The position numbers and the translations under genes are program-made. A stretch of DNA of 64,000 nucleotides, taken from positions 1 through 64,000 of IMG/VR virus record IMGVR_UViG_3300042907_001080. The stretch is one strand, 5' to 3'. Position 1 is the stretch's first letter, and each line of letters opens with the position of its first letter. Shown in pieces: positions 15,938 to 33,430 of this stretch. The notes beneath the pieces were generated by a model. That model did no database searches, was not told where the DNA came from, and saw only the letters and a list, made by a program, of their open reading frames with translations.

Positions 15938-16621
15938 TTATACCTGCGAATTATAAAAATTTAATAAGTTTACATACTGTTCGTTTTCATGTTTTCTAGA
16001 TCCTTTAGCAGTCCATATCATTCGTTCGGGGGTCATTTTTGTACCGGTCCATTCAGAACTTAATCGAGGTATTGATTTTTCTATCATCATAGCATCTAAT
16101 ATATCTTGATCTAAAAACCAATAAATGTTTCCTTGTTTGAAACTTTCTTGTAATCTAGTGCTATAAGTATTTCTAAAATCATCATCTCCAAACGATATTG
16201 CACTGGCTAACGATTTGCCACCTTTTCTAATAGTAATTTTACTAATGTTAGTTGCCTCTAAAAATTTAATTAATGGAATTGTTTTATTGGCAATCACATC
16301 ACAATCAAAACTTATAATTTTTGCAGCTGGATCAAATATTTCCGGAATTCGTATAAATCGAATGCAGGCACATAGGGTATTAAATTCTTTATCATCAACA
16401 TCTAGTAATTCGTTGGTGTAACTTATATTTTTTTGAGAACACCATTCTAGTTGTTTGTCTGTTGGATTATACAAGTGAACATGAACTTTTGCCCACGGCG
16501 CATGTTGTAGTAAACTTAAGGCCAGTGCTTTACCATATAGATCAAAATATTTTGAATCTGCCGCAAAATAAAAAAAGTTACCCGTTAATCGAGCCGGTAT
16601 ATTCAAAGAAGGAAGAATCAT
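15938..16621 (-). CDS. GT-A-like glycosyltransferase
   Basis: HVHLYNP, CIRF, FDCDVI (DxD), WFLDQ; last gene of sugar operon. Confidence 0.6.
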   Translation of the reverse strand: MILPSLNIPARLTGNFFYFAADSKYFDLYGKALALSLLQHAPWAKVHVHLYNPTDKQLEWCSQKNISYTNELLDVDDKEFNTLCACIRFIRIPEIFDPAAKIISFDCDVIANKTIPLIKFLEATNISKITIRKGGKSLASAISFGDDDFRNTYSTRLQESFKQGNIYWFLDQDILDAMMIEKSIPRLSSEWTGTKMTPERMIWTAKGSRKHENEQYVNLLNFYNSQV

Positions 16622-17433
16622 AGATTTTTTAATTCAATAAGCATTTGATCGTAATCGGAAATATTAAACTCTAATAATTTACGTGTGTCAATTAAGATTT
16701 TGTTTACGGGCTTTGGACCTTGTGTTTGTATAATGGTTTTGTTAAGAGCAAATATATCGTTTATTTTACACAACAAGTCATATTTGTTAATCTTATTATC
16801 ATTGTTAACAAGATGATACACTCCCGTAATTACCGGAGTTTGCATGTATTGATCAATGCATTTTGCCAACTGTAAGGTAGTGATGCCGTTCCACCAAGCA
16901 TTGTTCCATCCTTGCAATTCACTTGCAGAATTATTGACAATCCAATTAAAGAGTCCTGTGCCATTTGATTTTATTTCAGGTCCGATGATACTCATTCTAA
17001 AAGTAACGTCTTTATCGTTGTTAATTTCACCTAGAGATTTCGACTTGCCATACAAGTTAGTTTCGGTGTGTGTATCTAATTCAACATAGTTTCCTTTCTT
17101 GCCATCAAACACACAATCAGTTGATAAGTGAACCACTCGTGTTTTGCTTTTTAAAAAGGTATGTTCTAAAAAGTGTGGAAACCAACCATTGATCAATGCA
17201 GCACGATCCGGACGATCGTTACTATCTTTAACTAACAATCCCACACAATTGATCACAAAGTCAAAAATATTTGTAACTTCACCGAGGCGTTGTATTTCTG
17301 CAAAATTCTCAACATCTATAATAAGATCTGCATTAGATCTTGCCAGTGTGCTTACATCGTGGCCTTGTTGTTTGAGATATCGAGTGATAACATGACCGGC
17401 CATACCGTTACTGCCAACTACTAAGATTTTCAT
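16618..17433 (-). CDS. RmlD-like NAD(P)H sugar 4-reductase (SDR)
   Basis: GSNGMAG, HLSTDCVF, YGKSK (YxxxK). Confidence 0.88.
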   Translation of the reverse strand: MKILVVGSNGMAGHVITRYLKQQGHDVSTLARSNADLIIDVENFAEIQRLGEVTNIFDFVINCVGLLVKDSNDRPDRAALINGWFPHFLEHTFLKSKTRVVHLSTDCVFDGKKGNYVELDTHTETNLYGKSKSLGEINNDKDVTFRMSIIGPEIKSNGTGLFNWIVNNSASELQGWNNAWWNGITTLQLAKCIDQYMQTPVITGVYHLVNNDNKINKYDLLCKINDIFALNKTIIQTQGPKPVNKILIDTRKLLEFNISDYDQMLIELKNL

Positions 17434-18422
17434 ATAAAATTGCCTTTCTTAAGCATTTCTTTAATGGCATTGCGTTGCATAATAAATGTTTTAGAACTAA
17501 ACTCTTCTTCTGAAAACTTCTCTAAGCTGCTATACTTGTCTATTAATGTTTGTTTAGGATTAAATGGTAGTATCACAAAATATGCATCGTCATATTTGTA
17601 TGACATTACTGCTTCGTGTTTTGATATCAGCATCTCATCTAATTTTTCACCGGGTTTACTCCCCATCTCTGTAATTTCTGCATCGCCGTAGACATCTATC
17701 AAAATGTCTGCGATATCTTTGATGTATGCCGCTGGCATATTCATTACAAATGTTTCACCACCTATACTTTCTTCGGCAGCTTTAAATAGTAAACCAATAG
17801 CTTCTTCGAGTGTTAAGAAGAATCGAGTCATTCTTAGATCAGTGATAGTAACCGGTCCACCGTTACGGATCTGTTCTATAAAGTATGGAATAACACTGCC
17901 ATTAGATCCCATAACATTGCCTCCACGTACACAGACAAATCTAGTATGATCGGTTAGATCGTTGGCTTGAATAATCAACTTTTCACCCACAGCTTTAGTC
18001 ATTCCGTATAAGTTCAATGGCTCAACTGCCTTGTCGGTGGATACATCGATGACTTTTTTAACACGATTTTCAATCGCAGCATTAACAACATTTGTTGTAC
18101 CTATTACATTTGTTTTAATAGCTTCCTGAGGTTGATCTTCGCAGATAGGTACGTGTTTAAGAGCAGCCATGTGAAAAATATAATCAACATTCTTAGTAGC
18201 AAACTTAACTGCTTCGTAGTCTCTAACATCTCCTATGATGTATTTGATATTGAGATTTTTAAACTTACGTTGCATTAATACCTGCTGAAGTTCACCTCTT
18301 GAAAAAATAATAATTTCTTTAGGGTTGTGTTTTTCAAGCATTAATCGAGTCAGTGTTTGCCCCCACGAGCCAGTGCCGCCTGTAATTAAAATTCGTGCGT
18401 TGTCAAAAATACTATCATTCAT
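17430..18422 (-). CDS. UDP-GlcNAc 4,6-dehydratase (FnlA/WbjB/CapD/PseB family)
   Basis: ITGGTGSWG, IGDVRD, AALKHVP, STDKA, YGMTKA, GNVMGSNGSVIP, MTRF, PGEKL. Confidence 0.9.
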   Translation of the reverse strand: MNDSIFDNARILITGGTGSWGQTLTRLMLEKHNPKEIIIFSRGELQQVLMQRKFKNLNIKYIIGDVRDYEAVKFATKNVDYIFHMAALKHVPICEDQPQEAIKTNVIGTTNVVNAAIENRVKKVIDVSTDKAVEPLNLYGMTKAVGEKLIIQANDLTDHTRFVCVRGGNVMGSNGSVIPYFIEQIRNGGPVTITDLRMTRFFLTLEEAIGLLFKAAEESIGGETFVMNMPAAYIKDIADILIDVYGDAEITEMGSKPGEKLDEMLISKHEAVMSYKYDDAYFVILPFNPKQTLIDKYSSLEKFSEEEFSSKTFIMQRNAIKEMLKKGNFI

Positions 18423-19173
18423 ATTTTACTCCGATGTCATCTGGGTTGTGGAATAATGCTCTATGTTTGTTATCCAAAGATTCCACTTCCTCTGCAGGTC
18501 TTGTATTTGTATAGTAATACAAAATTAATGATCTACGACTTCTATCTTCGGGGCATTTTAACGGAGTAGGATGACCGTGAAAACTAAAATCGTCAGTTCT
18601 AAATACAACCAGTCTGTTAAGTAATGGACTAATTTTATCAACGCATACTCCTGGTTTGTTGTCGGGGGTTCTAGACCACATTTCTAAATGGCCTCCCCAT
18701 TCTTCTTGCCAATTATCGTTTAAGTATAGGATAACATTTAATCTTCTGTGTACTCCCATTAGATCGTGCCAGTTGCCGTCTGCGTGTACTGCTAGTGTGC
18801 CGCCTGTATTGATCTGGTTAAATCCGCCGCCTGTTAGATAGGGATCAGGAATAAGCCCATTAATTCCAGTTAGCTTAGATAAGAATCTTAAAAATGTTCC
18901 ACCATTTAAAAAATTAATTAAATCCAATGTGTTAGCAGGAACATCACTATCGTCTTTCCAATCACTACGCCATTTAATTTGAATCTTATCGTGATTACGC
19001 TTGTCCCAACTTTCAAAATTTTCATTGTTGAAGTCAGTTAGTGTTTCATTAATAACTTTTTCTGTAAAAAAATCATCTATAGCAATATAGTTAAACGGTT
19101 GCTTAGATTGAAATTCGTTAGAAAGATCTTCTAGATCAAATTTGTCAAATTCTACATATTTCTTTTTCATCAA
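18415..19173 (-). CDS. 2OG-Fe(II) oxygenase (HxD...H type)
   Basis: LAVHADGN, RRLNVILYLN, WGGHLE, SFHG, RRSL. Confidence 0.85.
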   Translation of the reverse strand: MMKKKYVEFDKFDLEDLSNEFQSKQPFNYIAIDDFFTEKVINETLTDFNNENFESWDKRNHDKIQIKWRSDWKDDSDVPANTLDLINFLNGGTFLRFLSKLTGINGLIPDPYLTGGGFNQINTGGTLAVHADGNWHDLMGVHRRLNVILYLNDNWQEEWGGHLEMWSRTPDNKPGVCVDKISPLLNRLVVFRTDDFSFHGHPTPLKCPEDRSRRSLILYYYTNTRPAEEVESLDNKHRALFHNPDDIGVKYE

Positions 19174-19179
19174 TTGTCC

Positions 19180-20253
19180 TTAGTTCGACAGTAGTATGTT
19201 AACAACTACGTCTGATACATTATTTTGATTGTACTCTTCAGGTATTTTCCAGTTCCTGTCAGCTGACTTCATTCTGTTAAAGCAGGCAACAATATTTTCT
19301 TTATCCAAGCCGCTAATTACGTTAGAGCCGCACCAAACTGTTTCTGGTCTTTCTGTTGTATCTCTAATGGTAATTGTTGGTATACCGAATAAACACATTT
19401 CTTCTTGAACCGTTCCTGAATCGCTAATTGCCATATGTGCATTTTTTTCTAAGTTGACAAAATCAAAAAACCCCAAAGGTTCCGTTATTATAATGTTTGG
19501 ATTATCAACTAAAATATTAAACTTTGCTAATTTTTGTTTGGTTCTAGGATGACAACTAAACACTATCTTATATTCTTTAGATATTTCTTCAAAACTTTCA
19601 AAAATATTAATCAACCGATCGTTAACATCAACATTTTCTGCTCGATGCGCTGTGGCTATAATGTAGTTATTTTTTTCAAGATTAAGTGCTGATAATATAG
19701 GAGAACTGTCTATTTCATTTGCATAAAAATCTATTACTTCTTTAATTGGATTCCCCGTGACAAATACTTTGTTGTTTGCAGCACCTTCACGCAATAAATT
19801 TTGACGGCTTAACTCAGTATAAGGTAAATTTATACTAGACACGGCATCAATAATTTTTCTATTCTTTTCTTCAGGAACTTTAAGATCATAACAACGATTG
19901 CCAGCTTCCATATGATAGACCGGAATGCCTAATCTTTCACATATAATTGCTGCTAGGCCTGAATTGGTGTCGCCCAATATCAAAACTTTATCAGGCTTAA
20001 ATTCGTTTACAAATTTTTCAACACCTACAAATGTATTACCAATTTGTTCTGCAAAGGATACAGATTTATTGTCAATTACATAATCTGGGTTTCTTAAACT
20101 CAATTCTTTGAAGAATACATCATTTAAATTTTTATCATAATTTTGACCGGTATGCAATATTTTATGATCAACAATGTTATCAAGTTTAGGAATAATTCTA
20201 GATAGTCTTATAATCTCAGGTCTTGTTCCTAAAATTGTTAGAACCTTAGTCAT
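19180..20253 (-). CDS. UDP-HexNAc 2-epimerase, non-hydrolysing (FnlC/WbjD/Cap5G-like)
   Basis: GTRPEIIR, HTGQNYD, LGDTNS, HMEAGNRCYD..PEEKNR, SDSGTVQEE, TERPE. Confidence 0.9.
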   Translation of the reverse strand: MTKVLTILGTRPEIIRLSRIIPKLDNIVDHKILHTGQNYDKNLNDVFFKELSLRNPDYVIDNKSVSFAEQIGNTFVGVEKFVNEFKPDKVLILGDTNSGLAAIICERLGIPVYHMEAGNRCYDLKVPEEKNRKIIDAVSSINLPYTELSRQNLLREGAANNKVFVTGNPIKEVIDFYANEIDSSPILSALNLEKNNYIIATAHRAENVDVNDRLINIFESFEEISKEYKIVFSCHPRTKQKLAKFNILVDNPNIIITEPLGFFDFVNLEKNAHMAISDSGTVQEEMCLFGIPTITIRDTTERPETVWCGSNVISGLDKENIVACFNRMKSADRNWKIPEEYNQNNVSDVVVNILLSN

Positions 20254-20779
20254 TTGGAAATACCCCAACAAAATAATGGCAAAGACTAGGTAAGTCTAAT
20301 GGTGTCCAGTCTGTAAAATCTTCTTTATGCCAAAGACTTTTATGTATGTCAAAAGTATTACCATAGCACCATAATCTTGGATCATTTACATTTTTATGAT
20401 TATCATCCCAAATTTCTTCTAACGGAGTCAATAATACAATTTTTTTAGTGGTAAGAGTTTTCACAGAATCTAAAAGACGAATGCCTGCATCTTTATCAAG
20501 GTGTTCGATAAAATCTATCATTAAAACATAATCAAATTTCTCACCGCCTAATAAGGTGTTTAGATCAACAGTTTCTAGGTCTGCTACAAAATCTGGATTC
20601 ACTGACTCCCATGCATCAATTGTGATAATTTTGCTACATCTGTCTTTAAATGGATCTGAATATAATTTCGGACCGCATCCGAGATCTAAAATAGAATCTC
20701 CTTCTTTAACAACGGAGTGTAGATATCTCATTAGCTCGTCGTTCGATGAAGCTCGTTTTCCGTTTATATTGTGTTTCAT
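20246..20779 (-). CDS. class I SAM-dependent methyltransferase
   Basis: ILDLGCG, FDYVLMIDFIEHL. Confidence 0.85.
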   Translation of the reverse strand: MKHNINGKRASSNDELMRYLHSVVKEGDSILDLGCGPKLYSDPFKDRCSKIITIDAWESVNPDFVADLETVDLNTLLGGEKFDYVLMIDFIEHLDKDAGIRLLDSVKTLTTKKIVLLTPLEEIWDDNHKNVNDPRLWCYGNTFDIHKSLWHKEDFTDWTPLDLPSLCHYFVGVFPND

Positions 20780-21546
20780 TTAATATTGTCCTTATTATTA
20801 GCTCTAATAGTGGGGGGAACAGATGCTTGCAATTTGGCAAGTAATTGTTGATTATTAACAGTTGCTGGCGGCGCCAGCGGGTTATTATACATTTTAGGGT
20901 GCCATTGATGTATAACATACGGTGCTTCAACAAACGTTACATTTAATTTTTTATTTTTAATTCTTTGTAAAAATTCGTCGTCATCATAACTATGACCGAA
21001 AGCAAATTCTTCGTCAAAACCATTTAATTCACACAAGTTCTTCCTAGTAATTGCCGAGGTATAGTGATATCCCACTGGATGGTGAACACTATGATTAACC
21101 CATTTTGTTTTACTAGATTTTGTTCCGCCTACATCTATTGTACCGCCTTGATGTAGAATTCTTACATCGCCTTTGTTACATGCCCAGCAATGAAAGGTTA
21201 GATAATTGTCATCAGTTAATGTTTGATTCACATATGAGATTACATCGCCTTGATGACAGCACTCTGGATTTTGAATAATAATTTTGTCACCAGAACTTTC
21301 ACGGAATCCAACATTATACGGCACACAGGGATTAAACCAAGTCTTAGATCCTCGATCTGACATTTTAATTATTTTAATATTCAGCGACGGAAATTCACTA
21401 GGAACAGTATCTAAACTGTTTTCTAAATTGCTAAAATCATCTACAATTATTACTTCAAAGTCTTTTTCCCGACTTTGAATAAATGTTTTTAGAGTATGTC
21501 TTAATAATTCTAATCGATTATAATATGCCATTACTATTGATATCAT
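20776..21546 (-). CDS. GT2 family glycosyltransferase
   Basis: ISIVMAYYNR, IIVDDFS, YNVG, GFDEEF..G..YDDDEF, HQWH. Confidence 0.88.
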   Translation of the reverse strand: MISIVMAYYNRLELLRHTLKTFIQSREKDFEVIIVDDFSNLENSLDTVPSEFPSLNIKIIKMSDRGSKTWFNPCVPYNVGFRESSGDKIIIQNPECCHQGDVISYVNQTLTDDNYLTFHCWACNKGDVRILHQGGTIDVGGTKSSKTKWVNHSVHHPVGYHYTSAITRKNLCELNGFDEEFAFGHSYDDDEFLQRIKNKKLNVTFVEAPYVIHQWHPKMYNNPLAPPATVNNQQLLAKLQASVPPTIRANNKDNIK

Positions 21547-22142
21547 GATAGTTTTACCTCAGCCATTATATATTTGTTTCGTTGATTAATCACATTAACA
21601 ATTTCTACGCCGTCTTCTTGCTCGGGCATATTAGTCTTTTTGTATATCACTCGCAAATCCATTATAATTCTCGTATTTGCATGTGAATGTTTTAATATCA
21701 AATCTTTATAAGTGTTTACAGGATAGTGAAAACCACAAGACACCCACGACGTAATCAAATCAAATTTAACATCTTCTGGAATATTAATATTATTGCAATC
21801 AATTAAATGATATTTTTTAGTGCCTAATTTTTTTAATTCTGCGTCTACCTCTGACAATGGATGATAGAATAAGAAATCGTTAGCTGTCTTATTATATTTT
21901 CCAGTTGATGCTTCGGGAGATTTAGAGTCGTTATCTTTAGTATCGCCGTCTAACAACCACAGCTCGGAATTATATTTTTCATTGAACATTCTCGATTCCC
22001 AAGCAAGCCCGCAGCCAATATCTAAAATCTTCATTGGTGCGCTGCCTAAGAATTTATCTAGAATTTCAAAATTTTCTTTCTTGTGGCTTTGATATAATTC
22101 TGTTTCCCAGAGCCCGCCACTGCCTAACCACTGTTTTGTCAT
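21543..22142 (-). CDS. class I SAM-dependent methyltransferase
   Basis: ILDIGCGLA, KFDLITSWVSCGFHYP. Confidence 0.75.
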   Translation of the reverse strand: MTKQWLGSGGLWETELYQSHKKENFEILDKFLGSAPMKILDIGCGLAWESRMFNEKYNSELWLLDGDTKDNDSKSPEASTGKYNKTANDFLFYHPLSEVDAELKKLGTKKYHLIDCNNINIPEDVKFDLITSWVSCGFHYPVNTYKDLILKHSHANTRIIMDLRVIYKKTNMPEQEDGVEIVNVINQRNKYIMAEVKLS

Positions 22143-22483
22143 TTTGAATACCCCACAGTTTCACGCTCAATGTCATCGTGATCAAATTCTGCCCAATATA
22201 ATTCAAATGCTACACAGTCTGTGACTGCTTCAAATTGATGATATTCGCCCGGAGCAACCTTTGTATATTCGCCTGCCTTTAACAAAGTTTCGTCTACGAG
22301 ATCATAATTGCCTTTCCATACACGAATAATCATTTCACCGGACTCGACAAAGAATCCATTCCACTTGTATTTGTGTTTATGCTTAGAACATACTCCACCG
22401 GCGTTGGCTTCAATACGATGAAATTCTAATACACCGTTGGCTTCTAACAATTCTGTCTGTCCCCATACTTTTCCTGCTTTCAT
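22139..22483 (-). CDS. cupin (phosphomannose-isomerase-like / sugar epimerase)
   Basis: KVWG, CSKHKH, FFVESG, PGEYHQF; SD AAGGAG. Confidence 0.8.
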   Translation of the reverse strand: MKAGKVWGQTELLEANGVLEFHRIEANAGGVCSKHKHKYKWNGFFVESGEMIIRVWKGNYDLVDETLLKAGEYTKVAPGEYHQFEAVTDCVAFELYWAEFDHDDIERETVGYSK

Positions 22484-22502
22484 GCTATCTCCTTAATGTG
22501 TG

Positions 22503-27132: not shown

Positions 27133-27140
27133 AATGTTGA

Positions 27141-27178: not shown

Positions 27179-27182
27179 GATC

Positions 27183-27581
27183 ATGAATAAGATTAAAAAA
27201 AGACTGAGTAAATTGTCAAAAAACGCAGACAATGCGTTGGTAATTGGTGCCGCATTTGGTCAATTAGAACAACTGTTAGACTTATATTCAACAATTTTTG
27301 TTGTGAACGAAGACAACACAGAACTAAAAGCAAAAAATCTCATTTATAGACAAAGCATTGACAGATTAGATAGCATTGTAAATGTCAGGGCAGTATTTTT
27401 TGACATCAAACACATCTCTAAATTAGAAAGTCTGCAAACATTTTGGAAGAAAAATAATTCGTTGATATTCATTGAAGGCGGCGACGCTTTGCCTAGGGAT
27501 CTATCAACGCCGTTATACGATTCAGGGTGGCGATGCACCAGTCTCCAAGGAGCATTTCACGTATGGGAAAAACAACAATGA
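27183..27581 (+). CDS. hypothetical protein, possibly degenerate methyltransferase fold
   Basis: ALVIGAAFG near N-terminus; coupled to downstream GT. Confidence 0.65.
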   Translation: MNKIKKRLSKLSKNADNALVIGAAFGQLEQLLDLYSTIFVVNEDNTELKAKNLIYRQSIDRLDSIVNVRAVFFDIKHISKLESLQTFWKKNNSLIFIEGGDALPRDLSTPLYDSGWRCTSLQGAFHVWEKQQ

Positions 27582-28411
27582 AAATAGCAGTAGTAACAAC
27601 CTTTCACGAAGACGGACTTAACAAATATGCACAGCGTATGATCAACACCTTCTGCGAGAACTGGCCTACTGAGGTCATACTTCATTTATATCCCGAAAAG
27701 TGCAACCCTGCGATCCGTGATCACAGTCGTGTCACACTGAAACGTCTAGAAGAAGTTGCAGAACTAATGACTTTTAAAAACACATGGAAAGATGTGCCTA
27801 AGGCCAACGGCGATGTGTCGGCGGATCCTGTGAGATCTCTAAGAAAAGATTCAGGCAAAGGATTCAAATGGCATGCTGTGAGATTTGCACATAAAGTTTA
27901 TGCCATATTTGATTGTGTCAAAGAAACAGATGCGGATATTTTAATATGGATGGATGCAGATACTATTTGCCACAGTCCTATCACCATGACCGATCTATAC
28001 AAGATGATTCCCACTGATAGTGAGCTGTGCTATCTGGGTCGAAGGGGCAAATATTCAGAGTGTGGTTTGTATGCAATGAATCTACGATCGCCTAACATTC
28101 AACTTTTTCTCAAAGAATTTCAAAGAGTCTATGATCAAGCCGAACAAGGAATTTTTCAGTTAGCTGAGTGGCATGACAGTTTTGTGTTTGATGCGGTACG
28201 AGTAAAATTTCCGCAGATGCGACAACTAGATTGGGCAGCACACTTGCATGACCTACGTCCAGCACCAGGAATGACGTCGGGCGAAGGACACCCATTAATT
28301 AATAGCCAATGGGGCGCATGGCTGGATCACCTCAAGGGTGGTAGAAAGAAATTAGGTCGTAGTAAACCTGAAGATCTAAAAGTTCAAAGAACAGAAGCGT
28401 ATTGGCGTTAG
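27578..28411 (+). CDS. GT-A glycosyltransferase
   Basis: FAHKVYA, IWMDADT (DxD), WHDSFVFD, DHLKG; start at ATG 27578. Confidence 0.75.
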   Translation: MKIAVVTTFHEDGLNKYAQRMINTFCENWPTEVILHLYPEKCNPAIRDHSRVTLKRLEEVAELMTFKNTWKDVPKANGDVSADPVRSLRKDSGKGFKWHAVRFAHKVYAIFDCVKETDADILIWMDADTICHSPITMTDLYKMIPTDSELCYLGRRGKYSECGLYAMNLRSPNIQLFLKEFQRVYDQAEQGIFQLAEWHDSFVFDAVRVKFPQMRQLDWAAHLHDLRPAPGMTSGEGHPLINSQWGAWLDHLKGGRKKLGRSKPEDLKVQRTEAYWR

Positions 28412-29334
28412 AGATACTGTTTGAAAAATTGCCAAGCTTCTCCGGATCGAAGTTCATTAAAATTCCAATGGCACATAGATATCTGTTCAATCCATGATTT
28501 TCTCTCGGGCATCTCGGGATTTTCTAATCGACTTAAATCTGTATTCGCTACTTGGTAACTTTGACTACGCTGTGGATTATGATCTGTAAGAAATGCCGGA
28601 ACTCCTTCAATAATACTAGCCACGCTTGGACTACTGTTGTATACTACTGTGGCCCATGCACCTCTTAAATCGTCGACTAATCTTTCATTAACACTTAATC
28701 GTACACCTTTGCCGTAAATTTTTAAAATTGATTTAATTTTTTTATCTCCGGGGTGTGTTCGAACAACAATCTGACGTTTTCTACTATGCTGTCTAATTTG
28801 TGCAATAGTTTGATCTAACCATGTCTGAACATCTAGCCCACCCATGCTCCACCCACCGTGTCGCTGTAGGCAAATCAATATGTGCTCTCCCTGTGTTCTC
28901 CAAGGCTGCAAACTTATGCGTAAATCGTGACTAATTTTTTGCCAACGTCCAGGATCGATATCTCGATCAAAGTAAAATCCAGTAGTAGGAAAAACTCCAT
29001 CAAAACTGTATCTCAGATAGGTTTTGGTATTATTCGGATCAGCATATAAAAACAAATTGCTGTCTACGATTAAACTTCTCCGATTGTTTTCTTTCTGCAA
29101 TGCAACGGCATCTTGTCTCAATTGAAGATGAGGAGCCGATTTACCATGTTCGTGAACAAACCCCTGTATCAATGCTACATCACAAGGCACAGCATTCATC
29201 CCAGTGTGTGCAATGGCATGATCCCCGGACGATTTCACTCCCTGCAAAAAATTATCCAAGATCAAAGGTTTTTCTGGATTCTTGTTTGTAGGCGGGATTC
29301 CACCATAATAGGCCACAGCGGTGATGTTAGACAC
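28408..29334 (-). CDS. GT-B KpsS/KpsC-like paralogue 2
   Basis: RTHPGD, VVYNSSPSVASIIEGVP, CHWNFNELRSG. Confidence 0.6.
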   Translation of the reverse strand: MSNITAVAYYGGIPPTNKNPEKPLILDNFLQGVKSSGDHAIAHTGMNAVPCDVALIQGFVHEHGKSAPHLQLRQDAVALQKENNRRSLIVDSNLFLYADPNNTKTYLRYSFDGVFPTTGFYFDRDIDPGRWQKISHDLRISLQPWRTQGEHILICLQRHGGWSMGGLDVQTWLDQTIAQIRQHSRKRQIVVRTHPGDKKIKSILKIYGKGVRLSVNERLVDDLRGAWATVVYNSSPSVASIIEGVPAFLTDHNPQRSQSYQVANTDLSRLENPEMPERKSWIEQISMCHWNFNELRSGEAWQFFKQYL

Positions 29335-30421
29335 TGTGATATTCCTTTACTATATTGTATGCAGTTCCGTCCATGAGTTCATTGTAGGTAAACTGACAAT
29401 AACTAAGCCATGCTAGCCAATCGCCAAGCGGGCCATAATATAAATCATTGATCTGTGCTAGATTATTTCTAGTAACAGAGTTACTAACATGTTTGTCAAG
29501 AGTGATAGCAGGAATGCCTGCCCAGATAGATTCCACAGCACTGTTTGAATTGATACTAACCGTGCAATAGTAGTCTCCATCTAGCAGTGTTTGATAAAGA
29601 CTAGTGCGTGTTTTCTTATTAGTTTTAGATCTAATTTCTATAGGTCTATCTGTGTGTTTTTTCAGTTCATCGACGATTTGTTTGGTCCAAGATTCCACAT
29701 CTACATGCATGATGCTGGCTGCAAACTCGCCGGGCTCTACCACTAATATTTTTTTGCCAGTGTTACGCCAAGGTCTAGGAAATTCTGTGAAATTTTTCAA
29801 TCTATCTGCAGGTGCAACAAATTGATTATTAAAATGCAGGTGATTTCTTGTAAGCCTATGCCATTTTTTATTAGATTCAACAAAATTAGTATACCCGCTA
29901 TCTATGAACCAGAACGGAAGATGATTATCAATTTTATCTACAATGATATTTTCATTGCCTACTGTGTTTCGTAATAGACAGTCTTCTGCGCTGTTCAAGA
30001 AATCTCTGCGACGAATCATAGTTGCTGTGGGATCAATTTGTAGTCCAACGGTTTTGATAAAATATTGTTGATCACTATTCATATAGGCGTCAATGATATT
30101 TTCAGCACCTAATTTTTCTATCACGTATTCAGCCTTTTTGTGTATTTGGCCGAAATAATTTTTTCTGTAATTTTCTAAAACTGTGTTGACTTTACTGCGC
30201 CATTCTATAGCATCCGCAGAGACTCCCCGCCATAGTTTTTCTTTAAACTTATCACGGAATTTTTCAATATCAAATTTATGATGATCTCTTTTTTCGATGA
30301 TAAAGTGTATAGCTTCTGCAGTTTTACGCTCATCTAACTCAATGTGTGCGCAATGATCTTTTAAATCTATCAGACTGATAAGATAGTGTGCAAGTTCTTT
30401 GTCGTTTACTAGTAATTTCAT
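29327..30421 (-). CDS. GT-B KpsS/KpsC-like paralogue 3
   Basis: FIDSGY, VSINSNSAVESIWAGIP, CQFTYNELMDG. Confidence 0.6.
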   Translation of the reverse strand: MKLLVNDKELAHYLISLIDLKDHCAHIELDERKTAEAIHFIIEKRDHHKFDIEKFRDKFKEKLWRGVSADAIEWRSKVNTVLENYRKNYFGQIHKKAEYVIEKLGAENIIDAYMNSDQQYFIKTVGLQIDPTATMIRRRDFLNSAEDCLLRNTVGNENIIVDKIDNHLPFWFIDSGYTNFVESNKKWHRLTRNHLHFNNQFVAPADRLKNFTEFPRPWRNTGKKILVVEPGEFAASIMHVDVESWTKQIVDELKKHTDRPIEIRSKTNKKTRTSLYQTLLDGDYYCTVSINSNSAVESIWAGIPAITLDKHVSNSVTRNNLAQINDLYYGPLGDWLAWLSYCQFTYNELMDGTAYNIVKEYHSV

Positions 30422-31188
30422 TGATTTAATATTTTCCAGGCTGTACCGTTGGTAATTTCTTCTTGGGTGAACTGGCCATACGCCAAGGTCTTACACATTT
30501 CGGTTATATTTTCTGTCGAAGGTTTGAATGGATTTCCGAGTGTGGATAGATCGGTAGATGCCAGAGTGCTGGCTGCGCAAGGCACCGAAACAAATGCCGG
30601 GATGCCGTATAGCACACTTTCCAATGATGCTATGCTGTTGAATGACACCGTGGCGTAAACTCCAGAATTAAATGCGTCGTAAATTGAATATCCATGTCCC
30701 CTTTCACTTCTTGATCCTTTCGCCCTGATTTCAATCGGCAAATTAGAATATGTTTTTATTTTTTCAGTAGTTTCTTTAATCCATGTATCACAATCAATAT
30801 CAAAATATCTACAGGCTTTGGGATTCGGCAATACCAATAATATCTTTTTATTAAAAGGTTTCCAGCCTTTCCAACTCAATCTAGGATCTTGGTTAAGAAG
30901 ATTGATCCATCGATCGGCGGGAACTGATTGAGGGGTAATATGTTGTAGATCATTTTTTACAATTCGGTGCCACCATTTTTTACCTGACTTGTTTCCTACA
31001 CTTGGAAAATTACCTACATAACCAGTATCTATGTAATAAAAATCTCTGTTCGTCTTTTTGCACTCTACTATTTCGCTTTTGCTTGTTACCCCACGAACAA
31101 CCATAGGGTTATCAATGTTGGACATATCCGTAGTACAAAAATGATTCGACCCTACGACCAGAGATTCTTCTAAAGATAGTTCTTTCAT
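30418..31188 (-). CDS. GT-B KpsS/KpsC-like paralogue 4
   Basis: YIDTGY, VSFNSIASLESVLYGIP, GQFTQEEITNG. Confidence 0.6.
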   Translation of the reverse strand: MKELSLEESLVVGSNHFCTTDMSNIDNPMVVRGVTSKSEIVECKKTNRDFYYIDTGYVGNFPSVGNKSGKKWWHRIVKNDLQHITPQSVPADRWINLLNQDPRLSWKGWKPFNKKILLVLPNPKACRYFDIDCDTWIKETTEKIKTYSNLPIEIRAKGSRSERGHGYSIYDAFNSGVYATVSFNSIASLESVLYGIPAFVSVPCAASTLASTDLSTLGNPFKPSTENITEMCKTLAYGQFTQEEITNGTAWKILNQ

Positions 31189-31979
31189 AATGTTAATAAC
31201 ATCTCCATGGCTTTGCCGTTTCTCAATTCTGAATTATGAAACTGCCCGTATGACAAATGACAGGCCCACGCATATAATTTATCTTGGTCGGGATAGTAAG
31301 GTTCGTTTATTTTAGATAGATCCTGCAAACTAACAGGACTAGCTGCATTAGCCGGTGCTAGAGTAAATGCAGGTATTCCAAGGAATACAGCTTCTGTAGC
31401 TGCTACACTGTTGAATGTAACTAATGCAAATACATCATCATTGAGGGCCTGTTCTAGTGTATCGTTAACTGTTCTATCTAATCTTTTAGGTGCCCGCTCT
31501 CTAACTACCACAGGTCTATCTGTGTATTTTTTTATTTCATTTACTGTATGTTCTAACCAAATATCTAGATTGTAGTCATAGAATCGCATGGGTTTTTCAT
31601 CTGGTTTCGCTACTAGTATCTTTCTTCCATCTTTCTTCCAGGGCTGAAACTTTTTATTAAAATGTTTAAATCTATCATCTTTTCTTGGCACGATCTCGCC
31701 ATGTTGTAGATTGTTCTTTACTATACGATGCCAATTTTTCCAACCATTGGGATTTGAATCAGTTCTCTCATTGCCAAAATATCCCGTGTCTATATAATAG
31801 AAATCACGACTATCTTCCCAACATTGGTGTATCCACTTTTTCTTAAGTATACCTCTTAATACAATAGGATCAATACTGTCGTTGTAATTAAAATCTTCAG
31901 TTGAAGTTGTTCTAGTGTTGCACCCCTGTGCAAACATGTTAATATATGGATCTTTGCCGTCTTTGCTTAAAAAGATCAT
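31185..31979 (-). CDS. GT-B KpsS/KpsC-like paralogue 5
   Basis: YIDTGY, VTFNSVAATEAVFLGIP, GQFHNSELRNG; start at ATG 31979 (ATGA overlap). Confidence 0.6.
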   Translation of the reverse strand: MIFLSKDGKDPYINMFAQGCNTRTTSTEDFNYNDSIDPIVLRGILKKKWIHQCWEDSRDFYYIDTGYFGNERTDSNPNGWKNWHRIVKNNLQHGEIVPRKDDRFKHFNKKFQPWKKDGRKILVAKPDEKPMRFYDYNLDIWLEHTVNEIKKYTDRPVVVRERAPKRLDRTVNDTLEQALNDDVFALVTFNSVAATEAVFLGIPAFTLAPANAASPVSLQDLSKINEPYYPDQDKLYAWACHLSYGQFHNSELRNGKAMEMLLTL

Positions 31980-32656
31980 AGACCGTGCTGTAGACAATAA
32001 TCTACGTAAATTTTTTCTCTATGCCATTCGTTGGAGAAATCACCCTGGTCTGAAAATTCATGGAAGCAAGGTGTTCCTAGGGTATAGTGAACTAATTTTG
32101 CTTGAGGGTTCCACTCGTATTCAATATCCAGCCAGTTCCATTCTACTGGAAGTTCGCCGACTAAGTCGTCAGTAAGCCATGTAAATCTATGTACCTGTGC
32201 TCCAGTGGCATTTTGTATAAACTCCGGAGTAACCACAGCATTGGCAGGGTGCCCACAGTTCCAAAGTATCACACTAGACCAATTTTTACAAGGATAGTCT
32301 TCGTTCTTGGCACCAAGATACTTTTCAGACATTTTAGTTTTGTAGTCGTGTTTAACAACCATAACTGCTTTTGAATTATCTCTTAATGCCCATAGTTTTT
32401 CAATGTCGTCACGCAATAACATATCGCCGTCCATGAATATTGCCCAACCTTTATATTGCATTAAGTGTGGAACAAGGAAGCGACTGTAGATAAAATGATT
32501 ACTACCGTCGGTGTGTTTTTCTTCGTAGTCTTTTAATATGTTCAATGCCAACGGGTTAATACTCACTGGATGACTAGAATGTCTAATAATACTGTTTGAA
32601 CACACATGGTATGCTATGGCTTCTCGGGGATCATACCCAATAAAAATTGGAATCAT
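31976..32656 (-). CDS. GT8-like glycosyltransferase
   Basis: IFIGYDPRE, FIYSRFLVP, FMDGDML, KNWSSVILWN, WNWL, LVHYTLGTP; start at ATG 32656. Confidence 0.8.
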   Translation of the reverse strand: MIPIFIGYDPREAIAYHVCSNSIIRHSSHPVSINPLALNILKDYEEKHTDGSNHFIYSRFLVPHLMQYKGWAIFMDGDMLLRDDIEKLWALRDNSKAVMVVKHDYKTKMSEKYLGAKNEDYPCKNWSSVILWNCGHPANAVVTPEFIQNATGAQVHRFTWLTDDLVGELPVEWNWLDIEYEWNPQAKLVHYTLGTPCFHEFSDQGDFSNEWHREKIYVDYCLQHGL

Positions 32657-33414
32657 TTTCTTTCTATATCCTCTTCTATGCACTGATCTCCGTATTGTAT
32701 TTCTACAACTTTCAGAGGCTGATCGGTTTCGTTGCATAACTTATGCCATTGATGCTTGTTGATGTGTATATGTTGAAATCGAGTAAATTCACCTAGCAGA
32801 TCCATGTCTGTAGATTGGTCAACAGTATAGACTGTAGCGATGCCTTCAGACACGAACCAATGTTCTGCTCGATTTTGATGGCGTTGCATGCTGAGACAGG
32901 TTTTAGGTAATACCGTAAGTTCTTTGACTTTGACTTCTTGACCTTGTTCATGCAAGACACGATAGTATCCCCAGGCCCTACCGGTCTTAGGAGCCTTCCA
33001 TTCTTGAAGAATCCACGAACTAGAATTCATTTTATTTTCGCCGCCCACACCAAATACAAATGACAAATTGGAATCTACAACATCCATCTCTGGAATGTTA
33101 TCTTTGGTCCTATCGCCGCCATTGGCAAATATCAGTTTGGCATCGGGATAATGTGCTCGCACTTGTTGAATAAAATGTTTTGCTGATCCGTCATCGTCAT
33201 TAAAGGTATAAACTTCGTCAACCATCGATAGATTATTGATGATGCACAGTCGTTCGTTCCACGGCATAAAGGCCGCGCCTTTTTTACGGACAAGCCAATC
33301 GTCAGAATTTAATCCAACAATTAACATGTCTCCTAGAGTTTTTGCAGCTTTGAAGTAGGCAATGTGCCCGGAATGTAGGGGATCAAATCCACCAGTAATT
33401 AAAACGATTTTCAT
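32653..33414 (-). CDS. cytidylyltransferase-family nucleotidyltransferase (RfaE-II/TagD-like) fused to a PMI-type cupin
   Basis: GGFDPLHSGH (HxGH), GLNSD, NGGDR, SSS; C-terminal RAWGYYRVL, SMQRHQNRAEHW. Confidence 0.85.
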   Translation of the reverse strand: MKIVLITGGFDPLHSGHIAYFKAAKTLGDMLIVGLNSDDWLVRKKGAAFMPWNERLCIINNLSMVDEVYTFNDDDGSAKHFIQQVRAHYPDAKLIFANGGDRTKDNIPEMDVVDSNLSFVFGVGGENKMNSSSWILQEWKAPKTGRAWGYYRVLHEQGQEVKVKELTVLPKTCLSMQRHQNRAEHWFVSEGIATVYTVDQSTDMDLLGEFTRFQHIHINKHQWHKLCNETDQPLKVVEIQYGDQCIEEDIERK

Positions 33415-33430
33415 GCAGATATTTATCTGC
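33415..33430 (-). promoter_or_regulatory. late-type promoter within a palindrome, heading the 33414-28408 operon
   Basis: TAAATA (33420-33425) 5 nt before ATG; embedded in GCAGATA-TT-TATCTGC inverted repeat. Confidence 0.65.

What the first reader, a model, noticed from the sequence alone, without database searches (positions are those of the whole stretch)
15938..33430. Late-expressed, self-sufficient glycan-building system: candidate virion glycosylation (glyco-coat) pathway
Seen: about 18 sugar-activation, glycosyltransferase and methyltransferase genes in tightly coupled operons, each headed by a TAAATA motif (22503, 27141/27171, 33420), the same motif that precedes terminase, neck, sheath and tube-like genes. 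Known: T4-type late promoters are TATAAATA; DNA-modifying enzymes of T4-like phages are expressed early or middle; virion glycosylation by phage GTs is documented in some mycobacteriophages and in giant viruses. Inference: late timing points to decoration of the particle (the sheath, neck and fibre are oversized and Ser/Thr-rich) or of the host surface, not DNA glucosylation. A complete precursor-to-polymer pathway of this size in a T4-like phage may be uncharacterised.
Basis: partly seen in the sequence, partly recalled or inferred. Interest (0 to 1): 0.78.

Follow-up and report, generated by a model that had tools for sequence, protein, structure and literature searches.

The report
Late-promoter glycan-building island, jumbo phage
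An uncultivated freshwater jumbo phage, distantly T4-like, carries about 18 soluble sugar-building genes behind the same late-type promoters as its particle genes; the glycan probably decorates the particle, but its target is unproven and similar islands are known in other aquatic T4-like phages.

Summary
Window 15938-33430 carries about 18 carbohydrate genes:
- a three-enzyme pathway from UDP-GlcNAc to a 2-acetamido-2,6-dideoxy-L-hexose
- a nucleotidyltransferase-cupin fusion
- GT2, GT8 and two divergent GT-A enzymes
- three methyltransferases, a 2OG oxygenase and a small cupin
- five paralogs of a virus-only family whose model matches retaining beta-Kdo transferases over its full length (Z 11.6)

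Every sense-strand TAAATA in the island is intergenic and heads an operon. The motif lies within 60 nt upstream of 63 genes genome-wide (6 expected), and those with an assigned function are almost all virion genes. A gp55 late sigma factor is encoded. TAAATA-N5-ATG before the first island gene is kept in 36 of 41 diverged relatives. Replication genes use sigma-70-type promoters instead.

"Self-sufficient precursor-to-polymer" is overstated: no membrane initiator, flippase, polymerase, ligase or ABC exporter is encoded. The interval also holds UvsW, a helicase-like protein and one backbone gene.

DNA glycosylation is unlikely, because no ThyA-type, TET-type or C5-methylase gene was found. Virion decoration is the best guess (about 0.4). 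Remodelling of host envelope glycan is the main rival (about 0.3).

Comparable islands are described in cyanophages and pelagimyophages, so this is a new variant, not a new kind.

The parts
33420..33425 (-). TAAATA late-type promoter element, 5 nt before the ATG of the first island gene; predicts a leaderless mRNA. A second copy lies at 33444-33449.
   Evidence: TAAATA-N5-ATG is kept in 36 of 41 distinct upstream sequences of relatives.
32653..33414 (-). Fusion of a cytidylyl/adenylyltransferase-like domain with a mannose-6-P-isomerase-type cupin; a sugar-phosphate activating enzyme of unknown substrate.
   Evidence: PF01467 and PF01050; RfaE domain II and TagD-like hits.
31976..32656 (-). GT8 glycosyltransferase. 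Its start at 32656 overlaps the upstream stop as ATGA.
   Evidence: PF01501, 30 bits; sequence read; 225-aa orthologs in relatives.
28408..31979 (-). Four tandem paralogs (31185-31979, 30418-31188, 29327-30421, 28408-29334) of a virus-only glycosyltransferase-like family with a beta-Kdo-transferase (GT99/GT107) fold.
   Evidence: Paralogy. Model of 31185-31979 has pLDDT 96.3. Top PDB matches are WbbB, KpsC and KrkA. The HP motif is present only in 28408-29334.
27141..28411 (+). Divergent plus-strand unit: TAAATA at 27141-27146, a 132-aa unknown (27183-27581) and a divergent GT-A glycosyltransferase with an invariant DAD motif (27563-28411).
   Evidence: The motif is kept in 16 of 16 relatives.
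26308..27176 (-). TATAAATA at 27171-27178 (TAAATA core 27171-27176) and the fifth paralog (26308-27132), which keeps the Q and R-x-HP motifs.
   Evidence: The motif is kept in 30 of 41 relatives.
23651..26311 (-). Embedded DNA module, not carbohydrate genes: a sigma-70-type promoter TTGACA-N17-TATACT (26311-26283), a helicase-like 394-aa protein (25092-26276) and the UvsW helicase (23651-25102).
   Evidence: (the promoter is conserved in relatives).
23013..23654 (-). FkbM-family methyltransferase inserted between UvsW and the backbone gene 22510-23016. Relatives have nothing or a KdsA-like gene in this slot.
   Evidence: PF05050 and TIGR01444.
22139..22508 (-). TAAATA at 22503-22508 and a small cupin with weak WbuC-family similarity, heading the precursor and tailoring operon.
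   Evidence: The motif is kept in 12 of 23 relatives.
19180..22142 (-). Methyltransferase-like 21543-22142, GT2 20776-21546, Methyltransf_23 20246-20779, and non-hydrolysing UDP-GlcNAc 2-epimerase 19180-20253.
   Evidence: TIGR00236 scores 292.5 bits against a cut-off of 210.
15938..19170 (-). 2OG-Fe(II) oxygenase 18415-19170, inverting UDP-GlcNAc 4,6-dehydratase/5-epimerase 17430-18422, RmlD-like 4-reductase 16618-17433, and GT8-like 15938-16606.
   Evidence: PDB matches are WbjB, PseB and CapE at E 1e-68 to 1e-75.
8677..10146 (-). NodU/Nol-type carbamoyltransferase outside the interval, between the replicative helicase and primase genes, with no TAAATA; possibly a glycan-tailoring enzyme.
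   Evidence: phrog_1601, E 2e-97; NodU hit.

Best explanation
This is a lineage-specific, hypervariable glycan-assembly island. It is inserted on both sides of uvsW in the replication/recombination backbone of an uncultivated freshwater jumbo myovirus related to the Rak2, CBB and Atu_ph07 group.

Inferred regulation. Late in infection a gp55-type sigma factor directs host RNA polymerase to TAAATA elements at 33420, 27171, 27141 and 22503. These are the same elements that drive the terminase, tube, sheath and baseplate genes.

Shown at family level. A three-enzyme cassette is present: an inverting 4,6-dehydratase/5-epimerase, an RmlD-like 4-reductase and a non-hydrolysing 2-epimerase. By analogy with FnlABC and QnlABC, it converts host UDP-GlcNAc into a UDP-2-acetamido-2,6-dideoxy-L-hexose of the L-RhaNAc, L-QuiNAc or L-FucNAc type. 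A nucleotidyltransferase-cupin fusion activates a second sugar. A genuine Kdo-8-phosphate synthase elsewhere in the genome (219946-220791), with the same promoter type, points to Kdo as a likely component.

Inferred assembly. Up to nine soluble glycosyltransferases build an oligo- or polysaccharide in the cytoplasm: GT2, GT8, two divergent GT-A enzymes and five paralogs with a beta-Kdo-transferase fold. Three methyltransferases and a 2OG oxygenase tailor it.

Inferred target (the weakest step). Because no export machinery is encoded and expression is co-timed with the virion genes, the glycan is most likely attached to the phage's own structural proteins before or during assembly. This would resemble giant viruses and mycobacteriophages.

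Relatives keep the assembly block but swap the precursor and tailoring cassette, so the glycan appears to be under diversifying selection.
For: - Gene functions.
- Beta-Kdo-transferase fold of the five-paralog family: pLDDT 96.3; the top 26 Foldseek hits are all WbbB, KpsC or KrkA; VIA-align Z 9.2-11.6 over residues 1-257/264, whereas other GT-B proteins align only the C-terminal half; profile alignment of the R-x-HP and NS...EA..G motifs to WbbB.
- KdsA equivalog, 406 bits against a cut-off of 242, preceded by TAAATA-N5-ATG.
- Late-promoter case: motif statistics; gp55 homolog next to gp47 and gp46, matching phrog_12791 at E 1.7e-80; motif-bearing genes with a PHROG category are baseplate, fibre, tube, sheath, terminase and virion proteins; the motif is conserved in diverged relatives and absent before UvsX, gp32 and UvsW; sigma-70-type promoters precede the primase and helicase-like genes; precedent in CBB and GAP32.
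- No membrane or export genes.
- Insertion relative to the backbone of Sinorhizobium phage Phosso.
- Cassette swapping in relatives.
- Links to virions: in Caulobacter phage CcrSC the same family, together with an FkbM methyltransferase, sits between the tail-fibre genes and the lysozyme gene; the related jumbo phage XacN1 showed at least two virion glycoproteins (PMC5852040); structural relatives include four paralogs in the giant algal virus Tetraselmis virus 1.
Against: - No acceptor has been identified, and no recognised protein-glycosylating (initiating) enzyme family is present.
- GT2, GT8, GT25 and beta-Kdo-transferase-like enzymes classically act on lipid-linked LPS or capsule intermediates at the inner face of the membrane.
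- The island lies in the replication/recombination module, not beside the structural genes.
- Structural proteins are only mildly Ser/Thr-enriched.
- Timing is inferred from promoter type only. Metatranscriptome contigs gave fragments of relatives with no 5' ends and no time axis.
- Three of the five paralogs lack the HP motif, and no conserved Asp sits where the nucleophile is expected, so use of Kdo as donor is unproven.
- No KdsB-type CMP-Kdo synthetase was found.
- The record is about 80% complete.
Confidence: 0.4

Rival explanations
1. Remodelling of host envelope glycan. The soluble enzymes act on host undecaprenyl- or lipid-linked O-antigen or capsule intermediates at the cytoplasmic face. 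The host's own exporters then carry the altered glycan outward, changing the infected cell's surface. The effect could be to stop progeny or competitor phages adsorbing to infected cells and debris, or to alter recognition by grazers.
For: - The enzyme families are those of LPS and capsule assembly.
- The nearest solved folds, WbbB and KpsC, cap or prime lipid-linked glycans.
- Methyltransferases here, and a kinase-like gene with methyltransferases in a relative, resemble the chain-terminating modifications of ABC-dependent O-antigens (own knowledge of WbdD).
- Absence of exporters fits reliance on the host.
- This is the standard reading of similar islands in pelagimyophages and cyanophages (PMC7029224; PMC12801897).
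Against: - Late, virion-type promoters leave little time for new glycan to reach and repopulate the outer surface. Known exclusion functions of T4 are early (own knowledge).
- No initiating phosphoglycosyltransferase is present.
- The family also occurs inside the tail-to-lysis junction of a Caulobacter siphovirus and in a eukaryotic giant virus, whose host has no LPS.
Confidence: 0.3
2. DNA hypermodification. The glycosyltransferases add sugars to a hydroxylated base in phage DNA just before packaging, protecting it from restriction.
For: - The island flanks uvsW within the replication/recombination module.
- Late expression is compatible with post-replicative modification (abstract of PMC13326640).
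- GT-A enzymes related to LPS transferases can act on DNA (Pyle et al.).
- Hypervariability would fit an arms race with restriction systems.
Against: - No ThyA-family hydroxymethylase or hydroxylase was found in this record or in five related contigs, and T4 gp42 finds nothing.
- An ordinary ThyX is present.
- No Tet/JBP dioxygenase was found, although the control for that search was silent. No C5 methyltransferase was found.
- T4 alpha- and beta-glucosyltransferase homologs are absent.
- Nine transferases, three methyltransferases and KdsA far exceed any known DNA glycan.
- Pyle et al. regard glycosyltransferase clusters without a neighbouring ThyS or 5mYOX gene as unlikely DNA modifiers.
- The phage assembles completely from at least 14 ordinary shotgun runs, which is weak evidence.
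Confidence: 0.07
3. There is no single product. The interval is a plastic region that has collected unrelated auxiliary genes (changes to the sugar-nucleotide pool, small-molecule methylation, protein hydroxylation) that merely share late promoters.
For: - The region is an insertion hot spot, with cassettes that differ between relatives.
- Several genes are assigned only at superfamily level.
- Other sugar and redox genes are scattered elsewhere in the genome.
Against: - The assembly block (nucleotidyltransferase-cupin, GT8, the paralogs, the GT-A enzyme) is syntenic and translationally coupled across relatives of 40-90% identity.
- The dehydratase, reductase and epimerase form a recognised pathway.
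- Similar combinations of methyltransferases and glycosyltransferases accompany this paralog family in unrelated phages.
Confidence: 0.1
4. Glycosylation of a cytoplasmic target that is not part of the particle, such as host proteins or a released soluble or lipid-anchored polymer that acts as a decoy after lysis.
For: All enzymes are soluble and no exporter is encoded. Lysis would release any cytoplasmic polymer.
Against: There is no precedent and no candidate target. The co-regulation with virion genes has no special explanation under this model.
Confidence: 0.08

Closest known systems
'LPS' or 'cell-wall synthesis and modification' gene islands of large T4-like cyanophages (P-SSM2, S-SCSM1, S-SCSM2R) and pelagimyophages
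   Same: Many glycosyltransferases (GT8 prominent), sugar-nucleotide epimerases and dehydratases, RfaE/TagD-type nucleotidyltransferases, KdsA and methyltransferases, all in hypervariable regions of aquatic T4-like genomes. The function has not been tested experimentally.
   Different: Here the island is in a Rak2/Atu_ph07-like jumbo lineage and flanks uvsW. It is shown to sit behind conserved gp55-type late promoters. It contains a five-fold expansion of an unnamed family with a beta-Kdo-transferase fold. The published reading of the other islands (host O-chain modification) fits late timing poorly.
Virus-encoded virion glycosylation in giant viruses (PBCV-1 capsid glycans; Mimivirus and Megavirus fibril glycans, including UDP-L-RhaNAc synthesis; predicted Kdo pathway of CroV)
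   Same: Soluble cytoplasmic transferases together with sugar methyltransferases and virus-encoded synthesis of rare 6-deoxy-amino sugars (own knowledge; review PMC9614988 listed). Structural relatives of the paralog family occur as four copies in Tetraselmis virus 1.
   Different: Those systems belong to eukaryotic viruses and have chemically determined glycans. Here nothing is known of the product, and the enzymes are not orthologous apart from fold-level similarity.
Mycobacteriophage virion glycosylation (Freeman et al. 2023, cited in PMC12619734)
   Same: Phage-encoded transferases that decorate capsid and tail-tube subunits, expressed with the late genes.
   Different: Those phages use one to a few transferases placed next to the structural genes, use host sugar nucleotides, and infect Gram-positive-type hosts. 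Here there are about 18 genes including precursor synthesis, located away from the structural module.
Retaining beta-Kdo glycosyltransferases KpsC and KpsS (GT107), WbbB (GT99) and KrkA
   Same: Full-length fold match (Z 11.6). The R-x-HP and NS..EA..G nucleotide-binding motifs are present in two paralogs. A KdsA gene is present in the genome.
   Different: Pfam PF05159 gives no hit. Three paralogs lack HP. No conserved Asp lies at the expected nucleophile position. The proteins are shorter (256-364 aa). Their acceptors are unknown.
FnlABC / QnlABC (WbvB/R/D, Cap5EFG) pathways to UDP-L-FucNAc, L-QuiNAc and L-RhaNAc
   Same: The same three enzyme classes, adjacent in one operon.
   Different: Scores fall below the equivalog cut-offs (PseB 327 against 407.75; FnlA 258 against 730). 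The reductase is a short RmlD-like protein, and a 2OG oxygenase is intercalated. The exact sugar cannot be named.
Phage DNA glycosylation systems (T4 alpha/beta-glucosyltransferases; arabinosyl-5hoC of RB69 and DLP3; 5mYOX-linked glycans)
   Same: Phage-encoded transferases, sometimes with sugar-nucleotide genes, near replication genes, and diverse between relatives.
   Different: The defining base-hydroxylating or hydroxymethylating partner is absent, and the complexity here is much greater.

Membership tests
T4-type late (gp55-dependent) transcription units | A -10-like (TA)TAAATA element upstream of the gene, with no -35 element | tested here: met
   TAAATA at 33420, 27171 (a full TATAAATA), 27141 and 22503. 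Strong positional enrichment. Conserved in relatives.
T4-type late (gp55-dependent) transcription units | A gp55 late sigma factor encoded by the phage | tested here: met
   G000 104078-104920: phmmer with T4 gp55 gives E 3e-8, and the gene lies next to gp47 and gp46. It matches phrog_12791 at E 1.7e-80.
T4-type late (gp55-dependent) transcription units | gp33 co-activator and gp45 sliding-clamp activator | tested here: inconclusive
   T4 gp45 found nothing by phmmer. gp33 was not searched. The CBB paper likewise found neither. The record is about 80% complete.
T4-type late (gp55-dependent) transcription units | Transcripts appear late and start just downstream of the element | not testable with these tools
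   Only unoriented metatranscriptome contigs of relatives were available.
UDP-2-acetamido-2,6-dideoxy-L-hexose pathway (FnlABC / QnlABC type) | An inverting UDP-GlcNAc 4,6-dehydratase/5-epimerase | tested here: met
   PF02719, 322.8 bits. PDB matches WbjB, PseB and CapE at E 1e-68 to 1e-75. Below the PseB and FnlA equivalog cut-offs, so the subfamily is open.
UDP-2-acetamido-2,6-dideoxy-L-hexose pathway (FnlABC / QnlABC type) | A 4-keto reductase followed by a non-hydrolysing 2-epimerase | tested here: met
   RmlD_sub_bind, 78.8 bits. WecB-type TIGR00236, 292.5 bits against a cut-off of 210. All are in one operon. The product sugar was not determined.
Retaining beta-Kdo glycosyltransferases (GT99/GT107) | The modified GT-B fold of KpsC and WbbB over the whole protein | tested here: met
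   The top 26 Foldseek hits are exclusively WbbB, KpsC or KrkA. Z is 9.2-11.6 with 206-234 residues aligned.
Retaining beta-Kdo glycosyltransferases (GT99/GT107) | The HP motif that binds CMP | tested here: inconclusive
   Present in 26308-27132 and 28408-29334 and in about 61-66% of family members. Absent in 29327, 30418 and 31185.
Retaining beta-Kdo glycosyltransferases (GT99/GT107) | A catalytic Asp nucleophile (KpsC D160, WbbB D232) | tested here: inconclusive
   No conserved Asp lies in the region expected from the profile alignment. No residue-level structural alignment was available.
Retaining beta-Kdo glycosyltransferases (GT99/GT107) | Sequence membership in Pfam Capsule_synth (PF05159) | tested here: not met
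   No match at E <= 1 in the genome. Only 17-18% of neighbouring ESM Atlas clusters carry the domain.
Complete polysaccharide export pathway (Wzx/Wzy- or ABC-transporter-dependent) | A membrane initiating transferase, a flippase or ABC transporter, and a polymerase or ligase | tested here: not met
   No protein in the island has a hydrophobic-segment pattern consistent with a membrane protein. The only polytopic protein in the genome is of the Bax-inhibitor-1 family. There is no ABC ATPase.
Phage DNA glycosyl-hypermodification systems | A ThyA-family dCMP/dUMP hydroxymethylase or hydroxylase, or a C5-methyltransferase plus TET-like dioxygenase | tested here: not met
   PF00303 is absent here and in five related contigs. 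T4 gp42 finds nothing. PF00145 is absent. PF12851 is absent, but the control for that search was silent. The record is about 80% complete.
Phage DNA glycosyl-hypermodification systems | Glycosylated bases in virion DNA | not testable with these tools
   This needs LC-MS of virion DNA or raw-signal analysis of long reads.
Mycobacteriophage-type virion glycosylation | Transferase genes adjoining the structural genes, and glycan on capsid or tube subunits | tested here: inconclusive
   The island is not in the structural module, although it shares that module's promoter type. The homologous block in Caulobacter phage CcrSC does adjoin the tail genes. Glycan on particles is not testable here.

The most novel reading that the evidence does not exclude
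A bacteriophage counterpart of the giant-virus 'glyco-coat'. In this reading a T4-like jumbo phage builds, in the cytoplasm and from its own late operons, a methylated glycan containing Kdo and L-6-deoxy-HexNAc on its virion proteins. It does so with a large, unnamed, virus-specific family of transferases with a beta-Kdo-transferase fold: at least 4,469 metagenomic members, shared with Caulobacter phages, pelagimyophages and the giant algal virus TetV-1. Swapping of the precursor cassette would then give closely related phages different particle 'serotypes'.
Probability: 0.3. Interest if true: 0.8.

Novelty: new variant of a known kind. Interest (0 to 1): 0.55.

Why it matters
Glycosyltransferase-rich islands are common in large aquatic phages. 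They are routinely labelled as host LPS-modifying auxiliary genes without any test.

This case adds a concrete regulatory argument. The island uses conserved gp55-type late promoters, identical to those of the particle genes. Replication genes embedded in the same stretch use sigma-70-type promoters. This points away from early host-surface conversion and towards a product needed at assembly.

The work also defines a very large, unnamed viral protein family with the fold of retaining beta-Kdo transferases. This gives biochemists a tractable target.

If particle glycosylation were confirmed, it would extend virion 'serotype' diversity from mycobacteriophages and giant viruses to abundant freshwater myoviruses. 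That would bear on adsorption, grazing, particle stability and immune or lectin recognition.

Tried and rejected
- Megablast of the island against 50,697 phage records found nothing. The dehydratase has no close homolog among isolates, at most 45% identity.
- A search for RNA runs found none with the long query. With one gene, six metatranscriptomes held 12-14% of the words. Laying four of them gave only short contigs of relatives at 90-99% identity. Depth was higher on h151, h77 and UvsX than on the carbohydrate genes, with no 5' ends and no timing.
- I suspected the 394-aa conserved neighbour of the fifth paralog was part of the system. Its model (pLDDT 87.6) resembles SF2 helicases weakly, and it has its own sigma-70-type promoter, so I set it aside as a DNA-side gene.
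- Pfam, PHROGs and NCBIfam gave nothing for 27183-27581 or 22510-23016 beyond an unnamed PHROG.
- Ser/Thr richness of structural proteins is unremarkable.
- Host prediction from KdsA gave only 55-66% identity, to Alpha- and Betaproteobacteria, so the host is unresolved.
- Motif scanning of the AT-rich Pelagibacter phage Mosig island was uninformative.
- The idea that the nucleotidyltransferase-cupin fusion replaces KdsD and KdsB could not be tested.
- The carbamoyltransferase at 8677-10146 lacks the late motif, so I do not count it as part of the late system.

Full report
**Source and context.** The window is the first 64 kb of a 281,658-bp single-contig IMG/VR virus record. The record is 40.2% G+C, linear, and about 80% complete by CheckV. 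At least 14 lake-water metagenome runs hold it. Its UvsX-like recombinase is 62-67% identical to those of the jumbo myoviruses Phosso, Atu_ph07, Vibrio phage 2.275.O, CBB and GAP32. PHROG scans identify the following in the window:
- a DnaB-like helicase, a primase, gp32 and UvsX
- the large terminase
- a 1184-aa sheath, a tube protein and a sheath stabiliser

The phage is therefore a distant T4-like jumbo myovirus of the Rak2/Atu_ph07 kind.

**Gene content of 15938-33430.** Almost all genes are on the minus strand, and most overlap their neighbours by 4-8 nt.

Ten genes pass Pfam gathering scores:
- RmlD-like reductase
- Polysacc_synt_2 dehydratase
- 2OG-Fe(II) oxygenase
- UDP-GlcNAc 2-epimerase
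- Methyltransf_23
- GT2
- Cupin_2
- FkbM methyltransferase
- GT8
- a CTP_transf_like plus mannose-6-P-isomerase-cupin fusion

NCBIfam and PDB searches refine three of these:
- The dehydratase belongs to the inverting PseB/FnlA/CapE/WbjB group.
- The epimerase is WecB-type and non-hydrolysing, above its equivalog cut-off.
- The reductase is only family-level RmlD-like.

Three genes have only sub-threshold signals: a methyltransferase-like gene, a GT8-like gene, and a divergent GT-A enzyme. All 12 homologs of that GT-A enzyme hit GT2 weakly and share an invariant D-A-D motif.

Reading the sequence moves the GT8 start to 32656, where it overlaps the upstream stop as ATGA.

**The five-paralog family.** Five proteins with no Pfam hit are paralogs of one another: 26308-27132, 28408-29334, 29327-30421, 30418-31188 and 31185-31979.
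- A profile built from 61 members found in related contigs retrieves 4,469 metagenomic proteins. All are unnamed and without Pfam domains.
- ESM Atlas neighbours are virus-only clusters, and a minority carry Capsule_synth.
- AlphaFold on this alignment gave a model with pLDDT 96.3.
- The top 26 Foldseek matches in the PDB are exclusively the retaining beta-Kdo transferases WbbB, KpsC and KrkA.
- VIA-align gives Z 9.2-11.6 over the full length for these. Ordinary GT-B proteins and 2-epimerases align only the C-terminal half.
- The profile aligns the family's R-x-HP and NS..EA..G motifs to the CMP-binding region of WbbB.
- Only two of the five window paralogs keep Q and HP, and I could not find a conserved Asp at the expected nucleophile position.
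- Pfam PF05159 itself finds nothing in the genome.

I therefore call these glycosyltransferases with a beta-Kdo-transferase fold, not members of GT99 or GT107.

In BFVD the nearest viral structures come from uncultured Caudovirales, Caulobacter phage CcrColossus, and four paralogs of the giant algal virus Tetraselmis virus 1.

A genuine Kdo-8-phosphate synthase lies at G000 219946-220791 (406 bits against a cut-off of 242). It is preceded by TAAATA-N5-ATG. A relative carries a KdsA-like gene inside the island itself. No KdsB-type synthetase was found.

**What in the interval is not a carbohydrate gene.**
- 23651-25102 is the UvsW helicase.
- The conserved 394-aa protein upstream of UvsW models as a weak SF2-helicase-like fold.
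- 22510-23016 (phrog_11279) is a backbone gene.

Comparison with Sinorhizobium phage Phosso shows a shared backbone order: TerL, structural protein, gp32, UvsX, h77, h151, UvsW, phrog_11279, and on to primase and helicase. Every carbohydrate gene is absent from the Phosso region. The island is therefore a pair of lineage-specific insertions flanking uvsW, plus an FkbM methyltransferase inserted just downstream of uvsW.

**The promoter motif.** The cited positions are exact.
- In the island, the only sense-strand TAAATA copies are 22503, 27171 and 33420. All are intergenic and upstream of a gene. 27141 heads the plus-strand pair.
- Genome-wide there are 184 copies on both strands, against about 400 expected from base composition. 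In the window there are 47, against 67 +/- 9 from dinucleotide-preserving shuffles.
- Sixty-four copies lie within 60 nt upstream of a same-strand start, against 6.3 expected (P = 8e-46). They mark 63 of my 322 gene calls.
- The spacing is bimodal: 4-6 nt before the ATG (19 cases), or roughly 15-40 nt.
- Motif-bearing genes with an assigned function are the terminase, virion structural proteins, tube, sheath, baseplate hub and wedge, fibre-like proteins and a tail lysozyme. Beyond these, KdsA and a superoxide dismutase and a radical-SAM protein also carry it.
- The genome encodes a gp55 homolog next to gp47 and gp46, as in T4.
- ATAAATA was already proposed as the late promoter of CBB and GAP32 (PMC5259590).

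**Conservation of the motif in relatives.** IMG/VR scans with two island proteins returned 115 related loci. I compared distinct upstream sequences in these.

| Gene | Distinct upstream sequences with the motif |
|---|---|
| Nucleotidyltransferase-cupin (TAAATA-N5-ATG) | 36 of 41 |
| Fifth paralog (26308-27132) | 30 of 41 |
| 132-aa gene | 16 of 16 |
| Small cupin | 12 of 23 |
| UvsX | 0 of 31 |
| gp32 | 0 of 16 |
| UvsW | 0 of 11 |

For the nucleotidyltransferase-cupin gene, the rest of the spacer is not conserved.

The helicase-like gene upstream of UvsW instead has a conserved TTGACA-N17-TATAcT about 7 nt before its ATG. The primase gene has the same arrangement. The carbohydrate operons and the replication genes interleaved with them therefore belong to different promoter classes. 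This is the strongest available evidence for late expression, but it is still inference.

**Variation among relatives.** The assembly block keeps its position and order at 40-90% protein identity. It comprises the nucleotidyltransferase-cupin, GT8, one to four paralogs, the GT-A enzyme, the 132-aa gene and the fifth paralog.

The precursor and tailoring cassette moves or is replaced:
- In several contigs the dehydratase-reductase pair sits on the other strand, beside the GT-A gene, without an epimerase.
- A 384-kb contig instead carries another SDR epimerase, methyltransferases, an APH-like protein and a UDP-glucose dehydrogenase.
- Others add GT25 enzymes or KdsA.

This resembles the modular diversity of O-antigen loci and suggests diversifying selection on the glycan.

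**Where does the glycan go?**

*Export.* The island proteins show no transmembrane pattern. The only polytopic protein in the record is of the Bax-inhibitor-1 family. There is no ABC ATPase. The phage therefore cannot export a polymer by itself. 'Self-sufficient precursor-to-polymer' is not supported.

*DNA.* The record and five related contigs lack any ThyA-family enzyme. T4 gp42 and the alpha- and beta-glucosyltransferases find nothing. A normal ThyX is present. No C5 methyltransferase was found and no Tet/JBP hit, although the control for that search was silent. Pyle et al. consider glycosyltransferase clusters lacking such partners unlikely to modify DNA. Even so, DNA is disfavoured, at about 0.07.

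*Virion.* Four points favour the particle as the target:
- The promoter class is shared with particle genes.
- All the enzymes are cytoplasmic.
- In Caulobacter phage CcrSC the same family, with an FkbM methyltransferase, sits between the tail-fibre genes and the lysozyme gene.
- Glycoproteins were detected in particles of the related jumbo phage XacN1.

There are also parallels in giant viruses (own knowledge of PBCV-1, Mimivirus and Megavirus, and CroV).

*Host envelope.* Three points favour the host envelope as the target:
- The enzyme families and nearest folds are those of LPS and capsule assembly.
- Chain-capping chemistry (Kdo, methyl) is represented.
- This is the published reading for pelagimyophages and cyanophages.

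Late timing and the occurrence of the family in a eukaryotic virus count against it.

I put virion decoration at about 0.4 and host-glycan remodelling at about 0.3.

**Other checks.** Structural proteins are only moderately Ser/Thr-enriched and have no mucin-like tracts. Metatranscriptome contigs show that RNA libraries contain fragments of related phages across this region. They are denser on h151 and UvsX than on the carbohydrate genes, and they carry no information on 5' ends or timing. The host is unresolved.

**Verdict.** The finding is real and carefully observed. The late-promoter inference is well supported by comparative evidence. The claim of a complete pathway is overstated, and the target remains open. 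Similar islands are documented in T4-like cyanophages and pelagimyophages, so I rate this a new variant of a known kind. The added value lies in three things: the conserved late regulation, the modular cassette swapping, and the recognition of a very large unnamed viral family with a beta-Kdo-transferase fold.

Noticed in passing
window 40591, 38993, 42570, 45517, 51638, 33420; G000 111033, 137798, 217864, 220797: Many late-type promoters sit exactly 5 nt before the ATG: TAAATA-N5-ATG at 12 called starts, and 19 with a 4-6 nt spacing. By the T4 rule for start sites this predicts leaderless mRNAs for the terminase, the tube protein, KdsA and others.
   Followed up: partly
window 26283-26311 (minus strand) and upstream of 10252-11271; G000 180472, 218091, 226780: Sigma-70-type promoters (TTGACA-N17-TATAcT) lie only about 7 nt before the ATG of the primase gene and of the helicase-like gene upstream of UvsW. 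The latter is conserved in relatives. Early or middle genes may also be leaderless.
   Followed up: partly
window 25092-26276 (minus strand): A conserved, virus-only 394-aa protein always lies next to UvsW. Its model (pLDDT 87.6) resembles SF2 helicases such as Mfd, UvsW and XPB only weakly, and it gets no Pfam hit. It may be a degenerate helicase paralog working with UvsW.
   Followed up: partly
G000 219946-220791 (outside the window): A bona fide Kdo-8-phosphate synthase (KdsA) with a TAAATA-N5-ATG promoter, far from the island. No KdsB-type CMP-Kdo synthetase was found in the record.
   Followed up: yes
window 8677-10146 (minus strand): A NodU/Nol-type carbamoyltransferase lies between the replicative helicase and primase genes, without the late motif. 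Its substrate is unknown.
   Followed up: partly
window 3860-4558 (plus strand): A six-transmembrane protein of the Bax-inhibitor-1 (YccA-like) family, 180 bits, with TAAATA 25 nt upstream. It is the only polytopic membrane protein in the record.
   Followed up: partly
G000 217301-235000 (outside the window): A cluster of stress and redox genes and odd enzymes: an Fe/Mn superoxide dismutase with the late motif, a UvdE endonuclease, a PTPS/QueD-like protein, two radical-SAM proteins (one with a SPASM domain), a cold-shock-domain plus glutathione-peroxidase fusion, another SDR sugar epimerase/dehydratase, and a second 2OG oxygenase.
   Followed up: no
L139 (Pelagibacter phage Mosig) 6117-11951; L140 (Caulobacter phage CcrSC) 7363-11849: The unnamed family with the beta-Kdo-transferase fold also occurs alongside methyltransferases in two unrelated isolates. 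In Mosig it sits with glycosyltransferases and a sulfotransferase near the nrd and primase genes. In CcrSC it sits with an FkbM methyltransferase between the tail-fibre genes and the lysozyme gene.
   Followed up: partly
window 33413-33432: The TAAATA before the first island gene lies at the centre of a short palindrome (GCAGA-TAAATA-TCTGC) that abuts the start codon. This is seen in some relatives but not all.
   Followed up: no
G000 114475-128292 (plus strand): A single open reading frame of 4,605 aa lies downstream of the baseplate wedge gene. Several further proteins of more than 1,300 aa are present (68676-76520, 76554-82169, 197738-201919, 202155-207032, 208835-216292).
   Followed up: no
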